Below, in pieces: positions 39,892 to 47,512 of a stretch of DNA of 64,000 nucleotides. The notes beneath the pieces are model-generated. The model was not told the origin of the DNA. It worked only from the letters and a program-made list of their open reading frames with translations, and made no database searches. The position numbers were made by a program, and so were the translations under genes. Location of the stretch: sequence record MW735835.1. One strand, 5' to 3'. Numbering within the stretch: position 1 is the first letter of the stretch; each line of letters begins with the position of its first letter.

Positions 39892-40721
39892 GGCGTATCC
39901 TCCGGAAGGGTAGAGAGCACGGCGGTGACGCGCTTGTAGGACTTCTGCACGACGAACGGATCATCATGCATCTCTTCTACGAAGAACATCACTTCGTCAC
40001 GCAGTGCATCGCGAGGGGTCTTGGCCAGGATGGCAATGGACAGCAATTGGTCAGCAAGATCCTCAGGACCGAGATCAGCCAATTGAGGCCGGGCGCTCTT
40101 GACCAGTTCTTCTGCCGAGGAACCGATCTCCACACCTGCGTTCAGGGATTCCATGCCGACGGTCAACTTCTCACCGACGATCTTCTGGTGAGCGTTCAGC
40201 AGACGGGTAGCGTTCTGTACGCCGTCTTCACCCTGCACGGTGTAACCCAGGTTACGTTCGACCCGTTCCTTGATGGCAAGGATCACGTCGCCGGAACACC
40301 CCAGCACGTACTCCATCAGTTCTTCAGGTTCGACCGCCATGTGGATGGCCAGTACGTTGCAGAGGGTATCGACCCCGTCTTCCCCGGCATTGACCGCGGT
40401 GAGGAATTCGTAGTCGTTGTCATTCGGGTTGAACAGCAAGCACTCGAGGATGCTTGCCAGCGGATCGAGCTTCAGGATGTCGAGGTCCAGTTCGATCTGC
40501 ATCTGCGCCAGCAAGGCACGGACCTGGTCCATGACGATGGTGCGGGCTTCGTCAACGAGGGTGATACTGTCGTGCTCGTTGGCGTTCATGCGCAGGATCA
40601 GGATACGGTCTTTGTAACCGGTAGCCTTGTACTTCTCCAGCGCTTGAGTCAGGGCCTCGAAACCATCGTAGACGGACGGGTCAACCTTATCCTGAAGGAT
40701 ATCGGAAAGTTCTTGCAACAT
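39888..40721 (-). CDS. Conserved acidic helical protein (gp81-like position)
   Basis: AAGGA RBS; coupled to vRNAP gene. Confidence 0.8.
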   Translation of the reverse strand: MLQELSDILQDKVDPSVYDGFEALTQALEKYKATGYKDRILILRMNANEHDSITLVDEARTIVMDQVRALLAQMQIELDLDILKLDPLASILECLLFNPNDNDYEFLTAVNAGEDGVDTLCNVLAIHMAVEPEELMEYVLGCSGDVILAIKERVERNLGYTVQGEDGVQNATRLLNAHQKIVGEKLTVGMESLNAGVEIGSSAEELVKSARPQLADLGPEDLADQLLSIAILAKTPRDALRDEVMFFVEEMHDDPFVVQKSYKRVTAVLSTLPEDTP

Positions 40722-40817
40722 GGCGGTTTCCTTAATAAAAAAAGTTTACCCGACCTAATATGAGTAAAGTACAAATAATTGGCCAGGCCGTAAACAAATT
40801 AACTGGGGTACAAATGA

Positions 40818-41216
40818 ATGAACACCACCGTCCAGACGCCTGCTCAGGCGTTGAGTGAGCTGCGCCAACAAGCGCTCAGACTCCTGTACAAATTCGCTGA
40901 ATCCACCCGTGATATCGCCCGCTTCCGTCAGTGGACCGATACCAACCGTCAAGCCCGTTGCAACCAACTGGTGCAGTGCATCAAGCGTGATCTCAACGAG
41001 TTCCATGGTCGGGTGCAAGCGCTCGACAACAAACACAAGCGCGAGATCTCCAGCAACGTACTGGCTCACCCGCATCACCCGGTCATGCTGGCCGCTGGCG
41101 GTGAGTGGTACTCCCTGATCGACGACATCACCAGTGTCGTCACCCCTAACTCGGCTGAACTTGCTGGCCTGCTGGCCCAAGAAGGTGCAGCCTCTCAACA
41201 AGCCGCTGTTGTATAA
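40818..41216 (+). CDS. Hypothetical protein
   Basis: 132 aa, strong codon bias, divergent from AT-rich spacer. Confidence 0.8.
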   Translation: MNTTVQTPAQALSELRQQALRLLYKFAESTRDIARFRQWTDTNRQARCNQLVQCIKRDLNEFHGRVQALDNKHKREISSNVLAHPHHPVMLAAGGEWYSLIDDITSVVTPNSAELAGLLAQEGAASQQAAVV

Positions 41217-41225
41217 GGTACTACC

Positions 41226-42830
41226 ATGAGCGACAATCAAAACGGCCAAGGTGGCATGGACGAGATCGATGGCGATCCGGCTGAGAACATGATCCAGGAC
41301 CCTGACGCGCCTCAAGGTGCTGATGCCTTTGCCGCTGCCGCGCAACAAGCCGCTGCTGCTGGTCCCGAGACTCCGGCTGAGAAACAGCCTGAGCCGAAAG
41401 TGGAAATCGAAGGTCTGTGGGATGAGGTCGACCAACCCAACCCGCACGTAACCCACAACGCCTCCATGTTCCATCGTCAGGCTCTGGCACCGACTCAGGT
41501 CGGCCTGGCAGCCCTGCACGTGGGCATGCGTGAGCTGGACATGATCATGGAAGCCCGTGGTCTGAACAACCTCACCGAAGAGAAGGCCAAGTCCCTCTCG
41601 AACGCTGACCGTCGCATGGTCAACCTAGCTCGTAACCTGACCACCATCTACCAAGACATCTACTTCGACGATGTCGACAAGGCCGGCAACTGGCACGCCA
41701 CGGTCATGCACAACGAGACCGCCCTCGGCGCTGGTAAGGTGAAAGCCGCCAACATCAAGGACCCGGTACTCGCCATTCGTGCGACCTTCGGCCAGGGTTC
41801 TCAGGTTCAGATCCCGCTGTGGTCCACTGGCCTGTGGGTGACCTTCCGTGCGCCGACCATCCAGGAACTGCTGGACTTCGAACAGAAGTGCCGCCTGGAG
41901 AAGATGAACCTCGGTCGTTCTTCCAACGGCATGGTCTTCTCGGCCGTCGAGGTGTACACCGTCGAGACTTACATGCGCTTCGCTCTGGAGCACGTGATCT
42001 CGGTGAACTACGCCTTCGAGACCGCTGACCACGTCGAAGAACTGCTGACCGTGATCCGTTCGCGCGATTACCAGCAGGTCGTGTGGGGCATGGTCTGTGC
42101 CATGTATCCGGATGGCTACCCGCTGCGTCAGCCGTGCGTGGCCAACCCCGATACCTGCGACCACCTGGACGAGGTTCTGCTGAACTTCGCCCGCATGGGC
42201 TTCGTGGACCGCGACAAGATCAGCGACAAGCAAGCGTTGATGATGGCCTCGCGTTCCACCAAGCGTGATCGCAAGTGGCTGGAAGAATACCAGGCCGAGT
42301 TCCCGTTCTTCGAGAAGCGCATCAACGTCGGCAATGGCCTGACTGCGGTACTGCGTTGCTCCTCGCTGGCCGAACAGATCGATGCAGGCCACCTGTGGGT
42401 GGACGGTATCTCCAAGGCAACCAACGAAGCCTTCGGTGCCCGTCTGTCCGAGATGGACCGCATCCGTCACATCATGCGTTCGGGCGCATTGACCAACCTG
42501 CGTCAGTACGGCCACTGGGTCGCCCAGTTCGAACACAAGACCGACCCGGAAGCTGCGCCGATCATTCACGCCGACTTCGAGAACAAGGACCGCATCCTCG
42601 AGTTGCTGTCTGAAGACCCGCAAGTCAGCGAGATGCTGACCAACGAGATCGTCGAGTGGATCAAGAAGTCGACCGTGTCCTACACTGCGCTGGCCAAGAC
42701 ACCGTGCCCGGCCTGCCAGAAGGAACCGGAAGACAAGACTCATCCGCACCTCATCCCGATCGACATCGGTTACGTTTTTTTCACCCTAGCCGCACTGAAG
42801 ATCAGCCAAGTAGAAGGCGCGGCGGTGTAA
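41226..42830 (+). CDS. T4 gp26-like baseplate/tail assembly chaperone
   Basis: IPLWSTGLWVTFRAPTIQELL resembles gp26 LPSxGxxVxFRP; Cys motifs PCVANPDTC and PCPAC. Confidence 0.6.
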   Translation: MSDNQNGQGGMDEIDGDPAENMIQDPDAPQGADAFAAAAQQAAAAGPETPAEKQPEPKVEIEGLWDEVDQPNPHVTHNASMFHRQALAPTQVGLAALHVGMRELDMIMEARGLNNLTEEKAKSLSNADRRMVNLARNLTTIYQDIYFDDVDKAGNWHATVMHNETALGAGKVKAANIKDPVLAIRATFGQGSQVQIPLWSTGLWVTFRAPTIQELLDFEQKCRLEKMNLGRSSNGMVFSAVEVYTVETYMRFALEHVISVNYAFETADHVEELLTVIRSRDYQQVVWGMVCAMYPDGYPLRQPCVANPDTCDHLDEVLLNFARMGFVDRDKISDKQALMMASRSTKRDRKWLEEYQAEFPFFEKRINVGNGLTAVLRCSSLAEQIDAGHLWVDGISKATNEAFGARLSEMDRIRHIMRSGALTNLRQYGHWVAQFEHKTDPEAAPIIHADFENKDRILELLSEDPQVSEMLTNEIVEWIKKSTVSYTALAKTPCPACQKEPEDKTHPHLIPIDIGYVFFTLAALKISQVEGAAV

Positions 42831-43285
42831 CCCTAGCAATAGGAGAACACGTCGGAGACCGAAGCTTCGGCTTAAAGCAGATCGGCAATCGTGATGAGCC
42901 TTCGCACCTGGACAGAATCTTGGGTACCTACGACAAGACGCTGGACAGTATCCAAGCGGAGATCATCACGAGGGAGTGTTACGACGAGTACTTCGGCATT
43001 TACGCTCAGAGTACCCAAGGAGCTTCTCCTTGGGCTTTGGCCGCGATGCATGAGCCGGAAGACCTAGGTAAGGTGGACCCGTTCGATGTGTACCTTGAGC
43101 GATACTTGGTCGCCAACGTGCTGAAGTACACGGGAATCAACTTTCAAGATTTCATGAAGTTGCCCCGTGATCGAGCGGAAGCCATGTTGAAAAGGTGTGA
43201 CTCGTTGTCCTCGAAAGAAGACAGTGATGTGGCCAACCTCGTCAACGGGCGGAACGCCAAGCAACCGACGATGAAACCGAAATAA
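42782..43285 (+). CDS. Downstream chaperone-like ORF (gp51/gpT-like), probably reached by -1 frameshift or a non-canonical start
   Basis: Open -1 frame from 42656 to 43285; protein-like body with INFQDFMKLP; no convincing RBS-linked start. Confidence 0.55.
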   Translation, partial: HPSRTEDQPSRRRGGVTLAIGEHVGDRSFGLKQIGNRDEPSHLDRILGTYDKTLDSIQAEIITRECYDEYFGIYAQSTQGASPWALAAMHEPEDLGKVDPFDVYLERYLVANVLKYTGINFQDFMKLPRDRAEAMLKRCDSLSSKEDSDVANLVNGRNAKQPTMKPK

Positions 43286-43329
43286 GGAGGAGGGGTTCGC
43301 CCCTCCTCTATTCCATCTCACAGTGACGA

Positions 43330-47350: not shown

Positions 47351-47426
47351 TCCGCGATAGCTCAGTTGGTAGAGCAGCAGACTGTTAATCTGTTGGTCCC
47401 TGGTTCGAGTCCAGGTCGCGGAGCCA
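47351..47426 (+). tRNA. tRNA-Asn (GTT)
   Basis: TCCGCGA/TCGCGGA acceptor, AGCTCAGTTGGTAGAGC D-arm, CT-GTT-AA loop, GTTCGAGT T-loop, encoded CCA. Confidence 0.97.
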
Positions 47427-47435
47427 GCTTCACCC

Positions 47436-47512
47436 GGCTCCATAGTTCAGTTGGTTAGAATGCTAGCCTGTCACGCTAGAGGTCAGGGGTTCGAGTCCCC
47501 TTGGAGTCGCCA
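47436..47512 (+). tRNA. tRNA-Asp (GTC)
   Basis: GGCTCCA/TGGAGTC acceptor, CTAGC-CT-GTC-AC-GCTAG anticodon arm, GGGGTTCGAGTCCCC T-arm, encoded CCA. Confidence 0.97.

What the first reader, a model, noticed from the sequence alone, without database searches (positions are those of the whole stretch)
41226..43285. Candidate programmed -1 frameshift making a G/GT-type tail chaperone pair in a jumbo phage
Seen: codons GTT TTT TTC at 42774-82 form the slippery heptamer T TTT TTC (42776-82). The T7 run and TTT codon are very unusual in this C-ending gene. The -1 frame is open to 43285 and becomes protein-like (…YDEYFGIY…INFQDFMKLP…), yet has no convincing start. GCCGC/GCGGC and CTGA/TCAG pairings lie just downstream. 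Established: long-tailed phages make tail-assembly chaperones G and GT this way, and the upstream protein resembles T4 gp26. Inference: a 534-aa product plus a ~685-aa fusion. I do not recall this being described for phiKZ-like phages.
Basis: partly seen in the sequence, partly recalled or inferred. Interest (0 to 1): 0.75.

Follow-up and report, generated by a model that had tools for sequence, protein, structure and literature searches.

The report
Conserved -1 frameshift in jumbo phages
A run of seven T's near the end of a conserved jumbo-phage gene (phiKZ gp77 family, whose fold resembles T4's baseplate-hub assembly protein gp26) is very probably a programmed -1 frameshift site that gives part of the protein a ~167-residue extra tail; the signal is kept in about 90% of 73 related phages, and none of the 30 phage records I opened annotates it.

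Summary
The window is Pseudomonas jumbo phage pPa_SNUABM_DT01. ORF 41226-42830 (534 aa) contains one in-phase slippery heptamer, T_TTT_TTC (42776-82), and the -1 frame is open from there to 43285. I compared 73 homologous loci: 30 isolates and 43 metagenomic contigs, mostly 20-35% protein identity.

- A T_TTT_TTN heptamer sits at the same xFFxL codons in 65 of 73 loci. Codon usage predicts 3.4 of 30; 24 of 30 were observed.
- The downstream ORF is in the -1 frame and stop-free from the site in 72 of 73 loci, with an extension of 152-183 codons.
- Conserved residues of the extension lie upstream of any ATG/GTG/TTG in many phages, including DT01 and a phiKZ-virus.
- In 23 of 29 isolates the -1 frame opens 2-20 codons before the site with no start codon in between.
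- No in-frame fusion was seen among homologues.

Best reading: -1 ribosomal frameshifting makes a 534-aa form and a ~686-aa form. Transcriptional slippage on the T-run is the main rival.

The "G/GT tail chaperone" label is not supported: there is no TAC homology and no tape-measure neighbour. Fold search does link the protein to T4 gp26-like baseplate-hub assembly proteins. No published description was found. This is a new member of a known kind of recoding.

The parts
41226..42830 (+). Frame-0 ORF, 534 aa. It is the homologue of phiKZ gp77 / 201phi2-1 gp136 / PhiPA3 gp074 / EL gp47. GenBank QTH80371.1 calls it 'putative baseplate hub assembly protein'.
   Evidence: phrog_4585 matches at E 1.7e-85. 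The AF2 model has pLDDT 70 and pTM 0.74. Foldseek links it to T4 gp26-like models. Four invariant Cys (C304, C311, C494, C497) appear in alignment A2.
42776..42782 (+). Slippery heptamer T_TTT_TTC in phase with frame 0 (T-run 42775-42781). It lies on the invariant Phe518-Phe519 codons.
   Evidence: It is the only in-phase heptamer in the ORF. The homologous T_TTT_TTN is present in 65 of 73 loci. The codon-usage null predicts 3.4 of 30 against 24 observed.
42789..42823 (+). Candidate stimulatory stem-loop. GCCGC (42789-93) pairs with GCGGC (42819-23), 6 nt after the heptamer.
   Evidence: The RNAalifold consensus keeps the stem in 12 of 12 DT01-clade sequences, with G-U changes only and no compensatory pairs, at -7.3 kcal/mol. 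It is not unusually stable for this gene, and no comparable structure is conserved family-wide. Status: compatible, unproven.
42776..43285 (+). The -1 frame reading from the site to stop TAA 43283-85: 169 codons counted from the site, 167 new codons after the shift. It encodes the C-terminal extension domain (phrog_12109 family).
   Evidence: the profile match starts near 42845, upstream of the annotated start. The -1 frame is stop-free for 60 codons after the site in 70 of 70 loci tested, against 8 of 70 for the +1 frame. Extension length is 152-183 codons across the family.
42831..42919 (+). A stretch annotated as intergenic that is in fact coding in the -1 frame and contains no ATG/GTG/TTG. 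It carries the conserved HVGDRxFG-type motif.
   Evidence: Codon-position divergence in the DT01 clade is 0.35/0.24/0.60, which is coding periodicity. The family-wide motif lies upstream of the first start codons.
42920..43285 (+). GenBank CDS QTH80372.1 (121 aa, TTG start). This is the annotated downstream 'gene', most likely just the distal part of the extension.
   Evidence: Gene callers give 101-145 aa for this ORF in close relatives, so there is no conserved start.
43287..43308 (.). A G+C-rich hairpin directly after the extension's stop codon, possibly the end of the transcription unit.
   Evidence: flags it as terminator-like on the minus strand. On the plus strand it is followed by a weak T tract.
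40818..41216 (+). Upstream neighbour (132 aa) at the position of the phiKZ gp78 homologue. It is likely in the same transcription unit.
   Evidence: The synteny gp79(-)/gp78(+)/gp77(+)/extension(+) is seen.

Best explanation
**Proposed mechanism**
- Ribosomes translating the gp77-family gene (41226-42830) mostly terminate at TAA 42828. This gives a 534-aa protein whose last 15 residues (conserved TLxxxK-type tail) are read in frame 0.
- A fraction of ribosomes slip one base back while the two Phe-tRNAs occupy T_TTT_TTC (42776-82).
- Those ribosomes continue in the -1 frame for 167 further codons to 43285. The product is about 686 aa (about 76 kDa) and shares residues 1-519 with the short form.
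- The ORF annotated downstream (42920-43285) is therefore not an independent gene in this phage. It is the distal part of a C-terminal extension domain.

**Scope and function**
- The arrangement is ancestral to the phiKZ-like (Chimalliviridae and allied) gp77 family.
- The core of the protein has the fold of T4 gp26-type baseplate-hub assembly proteins. The likely biological logic is a fixed ratio of two isoforms of a non-virion assembly factor.

**Shown versus inferred**
- Shown: the site, its phase, the open frame, coding constraint in the -1 frame upstream of any start codon, and family-wide conservation.
- Inferred: that the shift is ribosomal, how efficient it is, and what the protein does.
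For: 1. **Site conservation.** An in-phase T_TTT_TT[T/C/A/G] sits at the same xFFxL codons in 65 of 73 loci: 24/30 isolates, 33/35 pattern-found metagenomic loci, and 8/8 loci chosen by whole-protein HMM.
2. **Synonymous-site constraint.** With the amino acids fixed, codon usage predicts 3.4 of 30 heptamers against 24 observed. High-GC3 relatives that use TTT 0/11 to 0/17 elsewhere still have TTT at this site. No other in-phase T_TTT_TTN occurs in 34,221 codons of 70 genes.
3. **Frame relation.** The downstream ORF is in the -1 frame and stop-free from the site in 72 of 73 loci, with an extension of 152-183 codons. No locus of 70 has a stop in the first 60 -1-frame codons, against 62 of 70 for the +1 frame.
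4. **No conserved start.** The first ATG/GTG/TTG after the site is 48 codons away in DT01, 87 in the phiKZ-virus KTN4, 89 in AgentSmith, 79 in Ea277G and 70 in RAY. Conserved residues (FFYP, RF-G, AYDxxxGI) lie upstream of those codons.
5. **Coding signal in the 'gap'.** The DT01-clade gap 42831-42919 shows coding periodicity in the -1 frame.
6. **Initiation upstream of the site is excluded in most phages.** In 23 of 29 isolates the -1 frame opens 2-20 codons before the site with no start codon in between. The windows in which a shift could occur intersect at codons -2 to +10 around the heptamer.
7. **Reinitiation cannot reach a conserved motif.** In Moabite, KpLz-2_45, SPLA10, PCH45 and Ea277G the conserved RF-G motif is encoded before the frame-0 stop, so reinitiation after termination would miss it.
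8. **No fused versions.** All 45 close homologues are 520-557 aa. The best 150 of 1,631 family clusters all end within about 25 residues (usually 3-12) of the match end.
9. **A 6-T core in phase is enough.** Four loci have a T-run of only 6, which suits a ribosomal heptamer better than polymerase stuttering.
10. **Phages without a perfect heptamer tend to have their own start.** D6, Psa21, PhiPA3, Noxifer and pVa-21 have an ATG or TTG soon after the upstream stop.
Against: - There is no protein, ribosome-profiling or RNA evidence here or in the papers searched.
- No strong stimulatory RNA structure is conserved. The mean z-score of the 70 nt after the site is -0.7. The DT01 stem is short, shows no compensatory changes, and is no more stable than other windows of the gene.
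- T-runs of 7-9 (61 of 65 sites) would also allow RNA-polymerase slippage, which gives the same protein. These phages use their own RNA polymerases, whose slippage behaviour is unknown.
- Some DT01-clade relatives have an ATG or GTG 19-25 codons after the site, just before the HVGDRxFG motif. A free-standing extension protein may therefore exist in some lineages.
- The function is uncertain. The phiKZ gp077 homologue of phage Churi is listed among proteins detected early in infection (PMC11849849), which fits a late tail-assembly role poorly.
- The extension folds with low confidence on its own (pLDDT 48).
Confidence: 0.77

Rival explanations
1. The recoding is real but happens during transcription. 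The RNA polymerase (the phage's own multisubunit enzyme or the host's) stutters on the T7-T9 run and adds one U to some transcripts. Those transcripts then encode the long form in a single frame.
For: T-runs are 7, 8 or 9 nt in 61 of 65 canonical sites, lengths at which bacterial polymerases are known to slip (established knowledge). The product would be identical to the frameshift product. A small hairpin (42756-42769) lies just 5' of the run and was flagged as terminator-like. No strong ribosomal stimulator is conserved.
Against: Four loci have only six T's, exactly in heptamer phase. In every canonical case the preceding codon ends in T, even where that codon is rare. For example, valine codons ending in T are only 7% of valine codons in the DT01 gene. 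That is what the ribosomal X_XXY_YYZ rule needs. The upstream hairpin is weak: 5 bp, and 5 nt away from the run.
Confidence: 0.13
2. There is no recoding. The downstream ORF is an ordinary separate gene, started at the annotated TTG 42920, at a non-canonical codon, or by reinitiation after the upstream stop. The T-run is merely the way Phe-Phe happens to be encoded.
For: GenBank annotates it that way. Some relatives have ATG or GTG close to the start of the conserved region. An AGGAG at 42841-45 looks like a ribosome-binding site.
Against: Conserved, codon-periodic sequence lies upstream of 42920 with no start codon. The AGGAG is followed by GTC, and in relatives it varies as Leu/Ile-Gly codons of the -1 frame. 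In KTN4, AgentSmith, Ea277G and RAY more than 70 conserved codons precede any start. In five phages a conserved motif lies before the frame-0 stop. The synonymous-site conservation of the heptamer and the universal -1 phase would be left unexplained.
Confidence: 0.06
3. It is an artefact. The homopolymer length is mis-called in the assembly, and the two ORFs are really one continuous gene.
For: Homopolymers are error-prone. One relative (RTH11) does show a displaced frame arrangement in its record.
Against: The same two-frame arrangement recurs in 72 of 73 independent assemblies from many laboratories and platforms. No single-frame version appears among 45 close homologues or the best 150 family representatives. 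The frame-0 tail after the site is itself conserved, with L521 and K525 invariant in A2.
Confidence: 0.02

Closest known systems
Lambda G/GT and the conserved tail-assembly-chaperone frameshift of long-tailed phages (own knowledge: Levin et al. 1993; Xu, Hendrix and Duda 2004)
   Same: A -1 shift at a heptamer near the 3' end of the upstream ORF. It gives a major short form and a minor C-terminally extended form that share their N-terminal part. The extension has no start codon of its own, and no strong RNA stimulator is required. The products are assembly factors rather than virion parts; here the family is absent from all solved structures and does not appear among the Goslar baseplate proteins named in the passages read.
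   Different: The gene is not located between tube and tape-measure genes. The proteins are 534 and 686 aa rather than about 140 and 280 aa. There is no sequence or profile match to TAC families. The fold relates to T4 gp26-like proteins instead.
Phage P2 E/E' tail-gene frameshift (own knowledge: Christie et al. 2002)
   Same: A myophage assembly gene recoded by a -1 shift on a U6-type heptamer (T_TTT_TTG class). That class is also used here: T_TTT_TTG in pEa_SNUABM_54 and T_TTT_TTC in DT01.
   Different: It is a different protein family, a different size and a different genomic context. No homology was detected.
T4 gp26, baseplate hub assembly protein (UniProt P13335, named in the record's note)
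   Same: Fold-level similarity of the core of the DT01 protein to BFVD models named 'Baseplate hub assembly protein, bacteriophage T4-like', 'Baseplate hub subunit', 'Baseplate hub assembly chaperone' and 'Gp26 base plate hub subunit [Aeromonas phage 25]'. Both are apparently missing from the mature baseplate.
   Different: The gp26-like targets are 200-285 aa, so the DT01 protein has an extra N-terminal region of about 180 aa. There is no Pfam or NCBIfam profile match. The gene is not in a baseplate gene cluster. No frameshift is known to me for T4 gene 26 (own knowledge, not tested here).
E. coli dnaX tau/gamma (own knowledge)
   Same: A bacterial -1 frameshift that sets a ratio of two isoforms sharing the N-terminal part.
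   Different: In dnaX the shifted form is the shorter one, and it depends on a strong downstream hairpin plus an upstream Shine-Dalgarno-like element. Here the shifted form is longer and no such strong elements were found.

Membership tests
Programmed -1 ribosomal frameshift site | Slippery heptamer X_XXY_YYZ in phase with the upstream frame | tested here: met
   T_TTT_TTC at 42776-82, in phase. It is the only such heptamer in the ORF.
Programmed -1 ribosomal frameshift site | The -1 frame is open across the site and continues into a substantial, conserved coding region | tested here: met
   167 further codons to 43285. phrog_12109 matches at E 1.7e-25. The 'gap' shows coding periodicity. 70 of 70 loci are stop-free for 60 codons.
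Programmed -1 ribosomal frameshift site | Site, phase and frame offset conserved in diverged homologues beyond what the protein sequence requires | tested here: met
   65 of 73 loci have the heptamer. Expectation is 3.4 of 30 against 24 observed. 72 of 73 have the -1 offset.
Programmed -1 ribosomal frameshift site | Stimulatory element (downstream stem-loop or pseudoknot at 5-9 nt, or an upstream SD-like element) | tested here: inconclusive
   A 5-7 bp stem with a 6-nt spacer is kept in 12 of 12 DT01-clade sequences but shows no covariation. No family-wide structure was found, mean z -0.7. No SD-like element was seen upstream. Many phage sites of this kind work without one (own knowledge).
Programmed -1 ribosomal frameshift site | Trans-frame protein actually made | not testable with these tools
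   No proteomic or ribosome-profiling data were at hand, and none was found in the papers searched.
Tail assembly chaperone pair G/GT | Two overlapping ORFs lying between the major tail/tube gene and the tape-measure gene | tested here: not met
   The neighbours within 26 kb are RNA-polymerase subunits, a helicase, gp78/gp79-like genes, tRNAs and a DNA polymerase. No tube or tape-measure gene is annotated there.
Tail assembly chaperone pair G/GT | Homology to a known TAC family | tested here: not met
   No Pfam, NCBIfam or PDB sequence match. PHROG families 4585 and 12109 have unknown function. Named Foldseek matches are to baseplate-hub proteins, not TACs.
Tail assembly chaperone pair G/GT | -1 frameshift near the 3' end of the first ORF giving a fusion with the second | tested here: met
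   The site is 15 codons before the frame-0 stop. See the frameshift rows above.
Tail assembly chaperone pair G/GT | Small size (about 100-150 aa, with a fusion of about 250-300 aa) | tested here: not met
   534 aa and about 686 aa.
T4 gp26-like baseplate hub assembly protein | Sequence-profile match to the family | tested here: not met
   No Pfam hit at E<=1 for DT01 or for 12 diverse homologues. No NCBIfam hit.
T4 gp26-like baseplate hub assembly protein | Shared fold | tested here: met
   Foldseek against BFVD gives about 20 models named baseplate hub assembly protein, subunit or chaperone, including an Aeromonas phage 25 Gp26. E-values run from 8e-4 to 0.2, probability up to 1.0, and target-normalised TM is 0.43-0.60. 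The query model is of moderate quality, pLDDT 70.
T4 gp26-like baseplate hub assembly protein | Role in hub assembly, absent from the mature virion | not testable with these tools
   The evidence is indirect only. The family is absent from all PDB chains, including jumbo-phage virion structures. The Goslar paper reports that all density of the hub and inner baseplate was assigned, and neither gp80, gp81 nor gp82 appears anywhere in its text; how the paper's gene numbers map to the RefSeq locus tag of the Goslar homologue was not checked.

The most novel reading that the evidence does not exclude
This is an ancient recoding signal in a core gene of the nucleus-forming jumbo phages and their allies, a family of at least 1,631 protein clusters. 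A gp26-like hub-assembly factor is always made as two isoforms in a ratio set by frameshifting. In most lineages, phiKZ-viruses included, the extension domain exists only as the frameshift fusion. The small ORFs annotated downstream of gp77 homologues would then not be genes. That would make it one of the most widespread phage frameshifts outside the tail-chaperone G/GT case.
Probability: 0.6. Interest if true: 0.75.

Novelty: new member of a known kind. Interest (0 to 1): 0.68.

Why it matters
**Annotation.** In each of the 30 isolate records examined the region is annotated as two separate genes. The downstream start is often arbitrary: products of 75-182 aa in isolate records and 101-145 aa in close relatives. 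None carries a ribosomal-slippage feature.

**Biology.** phiKZ-like phages are model systems for the phage nucleus and for phage therapy. A conserved two-isoform assembly factor with a T4 gp26-like fold gives a concrete handle on how their very large baseplate hub is built. It extends the 'fixed-ratio by frameshift' logic of tail chaperones to another assembly step.

**Method.** A weak single-genome signal (one T7 run, not rarer than chance in the window) becomes decisive once phase, synonymous sites and frame openness are compared across diverged relatives.

Tried and rejected
- **Locus search with the 13-phage alignment A1** found no stretch conserved enough to search with. I used annotated phage records, a DT01-clade alignment and HMM-chosen representatives instead.
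- **Downstream RNA structure as a family-wide stimulator**: MFE z-scores average -0.7, and the DT01 stem shows no covariation. I could not support it beyond 'compatible'.
- **Shine-Dalgarno-led independent start**: AGGAG at 42841-45 is followed by GTC, and in relatives it is explained by -1-frame Leu/Ile-Gly codons. My simple SD scan found almost no SD before any candidate start in 29 phages.
- **Sequence-profile link to T4 gp26 or any named family**: none found.
- **PDB**: the sequence searches and the PDB fold search found nothing significant.
- **Structure of the extension alone**: pLDDT 48, not usable for fold search.
- **Literature**: nine searches found no description of this frameshift. 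The 'gp77' and 'gp136' hits were other genes numbered alike.
The two frames were always handled apart.
Full report
**Identity of the window.** The region is 100% identical to Pseudomonas phage pPa_SNUABM_DT01 (MW735835.1, 265.5 kb; record coordinate = window + 124000). GenBank annotates 41226-42830 as 'putative baseplate hub assembly protein' (QTH80371.1). It annotates 42920-43285 as a hypothetical protein with a TTG start (QTH80372.1). The neighbours are RNA-polymerase beta/beta' fragments, a helicase, tRNAs and a DNA polymerase, the usual make-up of a phiKZ-like jumbo phage. No tube or tape-measure gene is annotated within 26 kb.

- Codons GTT TTT TTC lie at 42774-82 in the frame of the 534-aa ORF.
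- The T-run is 42775-81 and the in-phase heptamer T_TTT_TTC is 42776-82.
- It is the only in-phase X_XXY_YYZ heptamer in the ORF.
- Phe is otherwise TTC 16 times and TTT once, with GC3 of 0.77.
- The -1 frame is open from 42614 to the stop at 43283-85. It has no ATG/GTG/TTG between 42704 and 42920.
- Two small corrections: 42656 is GTG rather than ATG, and the long product would be about 686 aa (519 + 167).
- A T7 run as such is not rarer than chance in the window: 2 found against 3.6 expected.

**What the two ORFs are.**
- The upstream protein belongs to phrog_4585 (E 1.7e-85).
- Record notes identify it as the homologue of phiKZ gp77, 201phi2-1 gp136, PhiPA3 gp074 and EL gp47.
- The -1-frame stretch matches phrog_12109, a profile of about 147 positions. 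The match starts near 42845, which is 75 nt upstream of the annotated TTG.
- tblastn finds the upstream gene in 228-240 phage records and the downstream domain in 50, always adjacent and in the same order.

**Comparative test in 30 isolates.** I fetched 29 further loci spanning Pseudomonas, Xanthomonas, Klebsiella, Serratia, Erwinia, Salmonella, Ralstonia, Burkholderia, Vibrio, Cronobacter, Escherichia (Goslar) and Bacillus phages. Protein identity to DT01 is mostly 20-33%.
- At the codons for the invariant Phe of the xFFxL motif (one of only 11 invariant columns), an in-phase T_TTT_TT[T/C/A/G] is present in 24 of 30.
- Five more phages have (G/A)_TTT_TT[T/C], and one has A_CTT_TTT.
- In 29 of 30 the downstream ORF is in the -1 frame, and that frame is stop-free from the site to the downstream stop. 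The extension is 153-182 codons.
- The exception, RTH11, has one frameshift-type discrepancy in its record relative to its close relative LucasX. A homopolymer call error is the simplest reading.

**Wider sampling.**
- A metagenome scan with a DT01-clade alignment returned 39 loci. Of the 35 that include the C-terminus, 33 have the canonical heptamer. All 35 have an open -1 extension of 152-179 codons.
- One of the two search patterns contained the FFT motif at the amino-acid level. I therefore also took eight family representatives chosen by a whole-protein HMM from 1.84 billion proteins. All eight have the heptamer and the open -1 frame.
- Totals: the canonical heptamer is in 65 of 73 loci, with T-run lengths of 6 (4 loci), 7 (33), 8 (24) and 9 (4).

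**Is it more than amino-acid conservation?**
- With the amino acids held fixed and each gene's own codon usage applied, 3.4 of 30 heptamers are expected and 24 are seen.
- In Xoo-sp14, RTH11 and FLC6, TTT is used 0 of 14, 0 of 11 and 0 of 17 times elsewhere, yet it is TTT at the site.
- No other in-phase T_TTT_TTN occurs in 34,221 codons of the 70 genes.
- In the first 60 codons after the site, the -1 frame has a stop in 0 of 70 loci and the +1 frame in 62 of 70.

**Can the extension be made any other way?**
- The first canonical start after the site is 48 codons away in DT01, 87 in KTN4 (a Phikzvirus), 89 in AgentSmith, 79 in Ea277G, 70 in RAY and 60 in pEa_SNUABM_54.
- The aligned extension shows conserved positions (FFYP, an RF-G motif, AYDxxxGI) upstream of those codons.
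- In the DT01 clade (14 sequences, 62-78% protein identity), the stretch between the frame-0 stop and any DT01 start has per-site divergence of 0.35/0.24/0.60 at -1-frame codon positions 1/2/3. That is like ordinary coding sequence.
- The 15 overlap codons are nearly frozen (0.15/0.05/0.07), as expected for dual coding.
- Upstream initiation is excluded in most phages. In 23 of 29 the -1 frame opens only 2-20 codons before the site with no start codon in between. The possible shift windows intersect at codons -2 to +10 around the heptamer.
- In five phages the frame-0 stop lies 39-46 codons after the site, beyond the RF-G motif. Termination-reinitiation cannot express that motif there.
- Phages lacking a perfect heptamer (D6, Psa21, PhiPA3, Noxifer, pVa-21) have an ATG or TTG soon after the upstream stop. 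This looks like a secondary replacement of the mechanism.
- Some DT01-clade relatives also have ATG or GTG 19-25 codons after the site. A free extension protein may therefore coexist in some lineages. DT01 has none.

**No fused versions.** All 45 close homologues are 520-557 aa. The best 150 of 1,631 family clusters end within about 25 residues (usually 3-12) of the match end. The frame-0 tail after the site is itself conserved, with T520, L521 and K525 invariant in A2. Both products therefore appear to be under selection.

**Mechanism.** The phase-exact U6N heptamer favours ribosomal -1 frameshifting. So do the requirement for a T at the wobble position of the preceding codon and the four six-T cases.
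- A stem (GCCGC 42789-93 with GCGGC 42819-23) begins 7 nt after the heptamer, leaving a 6-nt spacer. It is kept in 12 of 12 clade members, but only through G-U changes.
- Family-wide there is no conserved strong structure. That is also true of lambda G/GT (own knowledge).
- Transcriptional slippage on T7-T9 runs gives the same protein and cannot be excluded from sequence alone. I put it at about 0.13.

**Function.**
- Sequence profiles are silent, and no PDB chain matches.
- An AF2 model of the 534-aa protein (pLDDT 70, pTM 0.74) retrieves the family itself from BFVD. It then retrieves a run of models named baseplate hub assembly protein, subunit or chaperone, including Gp26 of the T4-like Aeromonas phage 25. 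Target-normalised TM is 0.43-0.60 and probability is up to 1.0.
- The gp26 likeness in the GenBank note and in the finding is thus a fold-level resemblance of the core to the gp26-like models, not a profile-level membership.
- The Goslar virion paper reports that all density of the hub and inner baseplate was assigned, and its text never mentions gp80, gp81 or gp82 (10.64898/2026.04.21.720040). I did not check how that paper's gene numbers map to the RefSeq locus tag of the Goslar homologue, so this agrees only indirectly with a non-virion assembly factor.
- Against a purely late role, the phiKZ gp077 homologue of phage Churi was listed among proteins detected early in infection (PMC11849849).
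- The extension alone models poorly (helical, pLDDT 48).

**Comparison and novelty.** In mechanism and logic this is closest to the tail-chaperone frameshifts (lambda G/GT, P2 E/E'). It fails their membership tests on position, size and homology. I found no description of this site in nine literature searches, and no ribosomal-slippage feature in any of the 30 phage records opened. It is a new member of a known kind of recoding, notable for its breadth and for the mis-annotation it explains.

Noticed in passing
L004:748-2950 (Xanthomonas phage RTH11, OQ790161.1): In this record the gp77-family gene shows one frameshift-type discrepancy relative to the rest of the family and to its close relative LucasX. 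The annotated upstream CDS therefore runs on in a third frame and overlaps the downstream ORF. It is probably a homopolymer call error, though possibly real.
   Followed up: partly
window 42756-42769: A small hairpin (5 bp, 4-nt loop) lies 5 nt upstream of the T-run and was flagged as terminator-like. It could matter if polymerase slippage or pausing plays a part. It is only loosely kept in the DT01 clade.
   Followed up: partly
window 43287-43308: A strong G+C-rich hairpin (9 bp) follows directly after the extension's stop codon. It probably marks the end of the gp78-gp77-extension transcription unit. It scores as a terminator on the minus strand.
   Followed up: no
L017:2620-2700 and L026:2959-3040 (Pseudomonas phages D6 and Psa21): These two phages have A_TTT_TTT instead of the canonical heptamer, plus an ATG 20 codons later. 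They also have an unusually stable long stem starting 4 nt after the site (z -3.3 and -3.7, more stable than every other window of the gene). A residual or differently stimulated shift cannot be excluded.
   Followed up: no
window 41226-42830 (residues C304, C311, C494, C497): Four cysteines in CX6C and CX2C pairs are invariant in the DT01 clade and present in most of the family, though absent in RSF1 and FLC6. This suggests a zinc site. The Goslar homologue gives a weak YgiT-type zinc-finger hit at the second pair (E 0.017, below the family's cut-off).
   Followed up: partly
L023:3103-3563 (Pseudomonas phage KTN4, Phikzvirus): The stretch between the gp77 homologue and the small annotated ORF KTN4_102 (80 aa) is 218 nt of 'intergenic' DNA. 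It is open and conserved in the -1 frame. The annotated ORF covers less than half of the extension domain.
   Followed up: yes
window 40737-40743 (minus strand): This is the only other T7 run in the 64-kb window. It lies in the short divergent gap between the minus-strand gene ending at 40721 and the plus-strand gene starting at 40818. It could be promoter-region AT-richness.
   Followed up: no
window 47351-47512: Two adjacent tRNA genes, Asn(GTT) and Asp(GTC), are annotated in the record downstream of the region.
   Followed up: no
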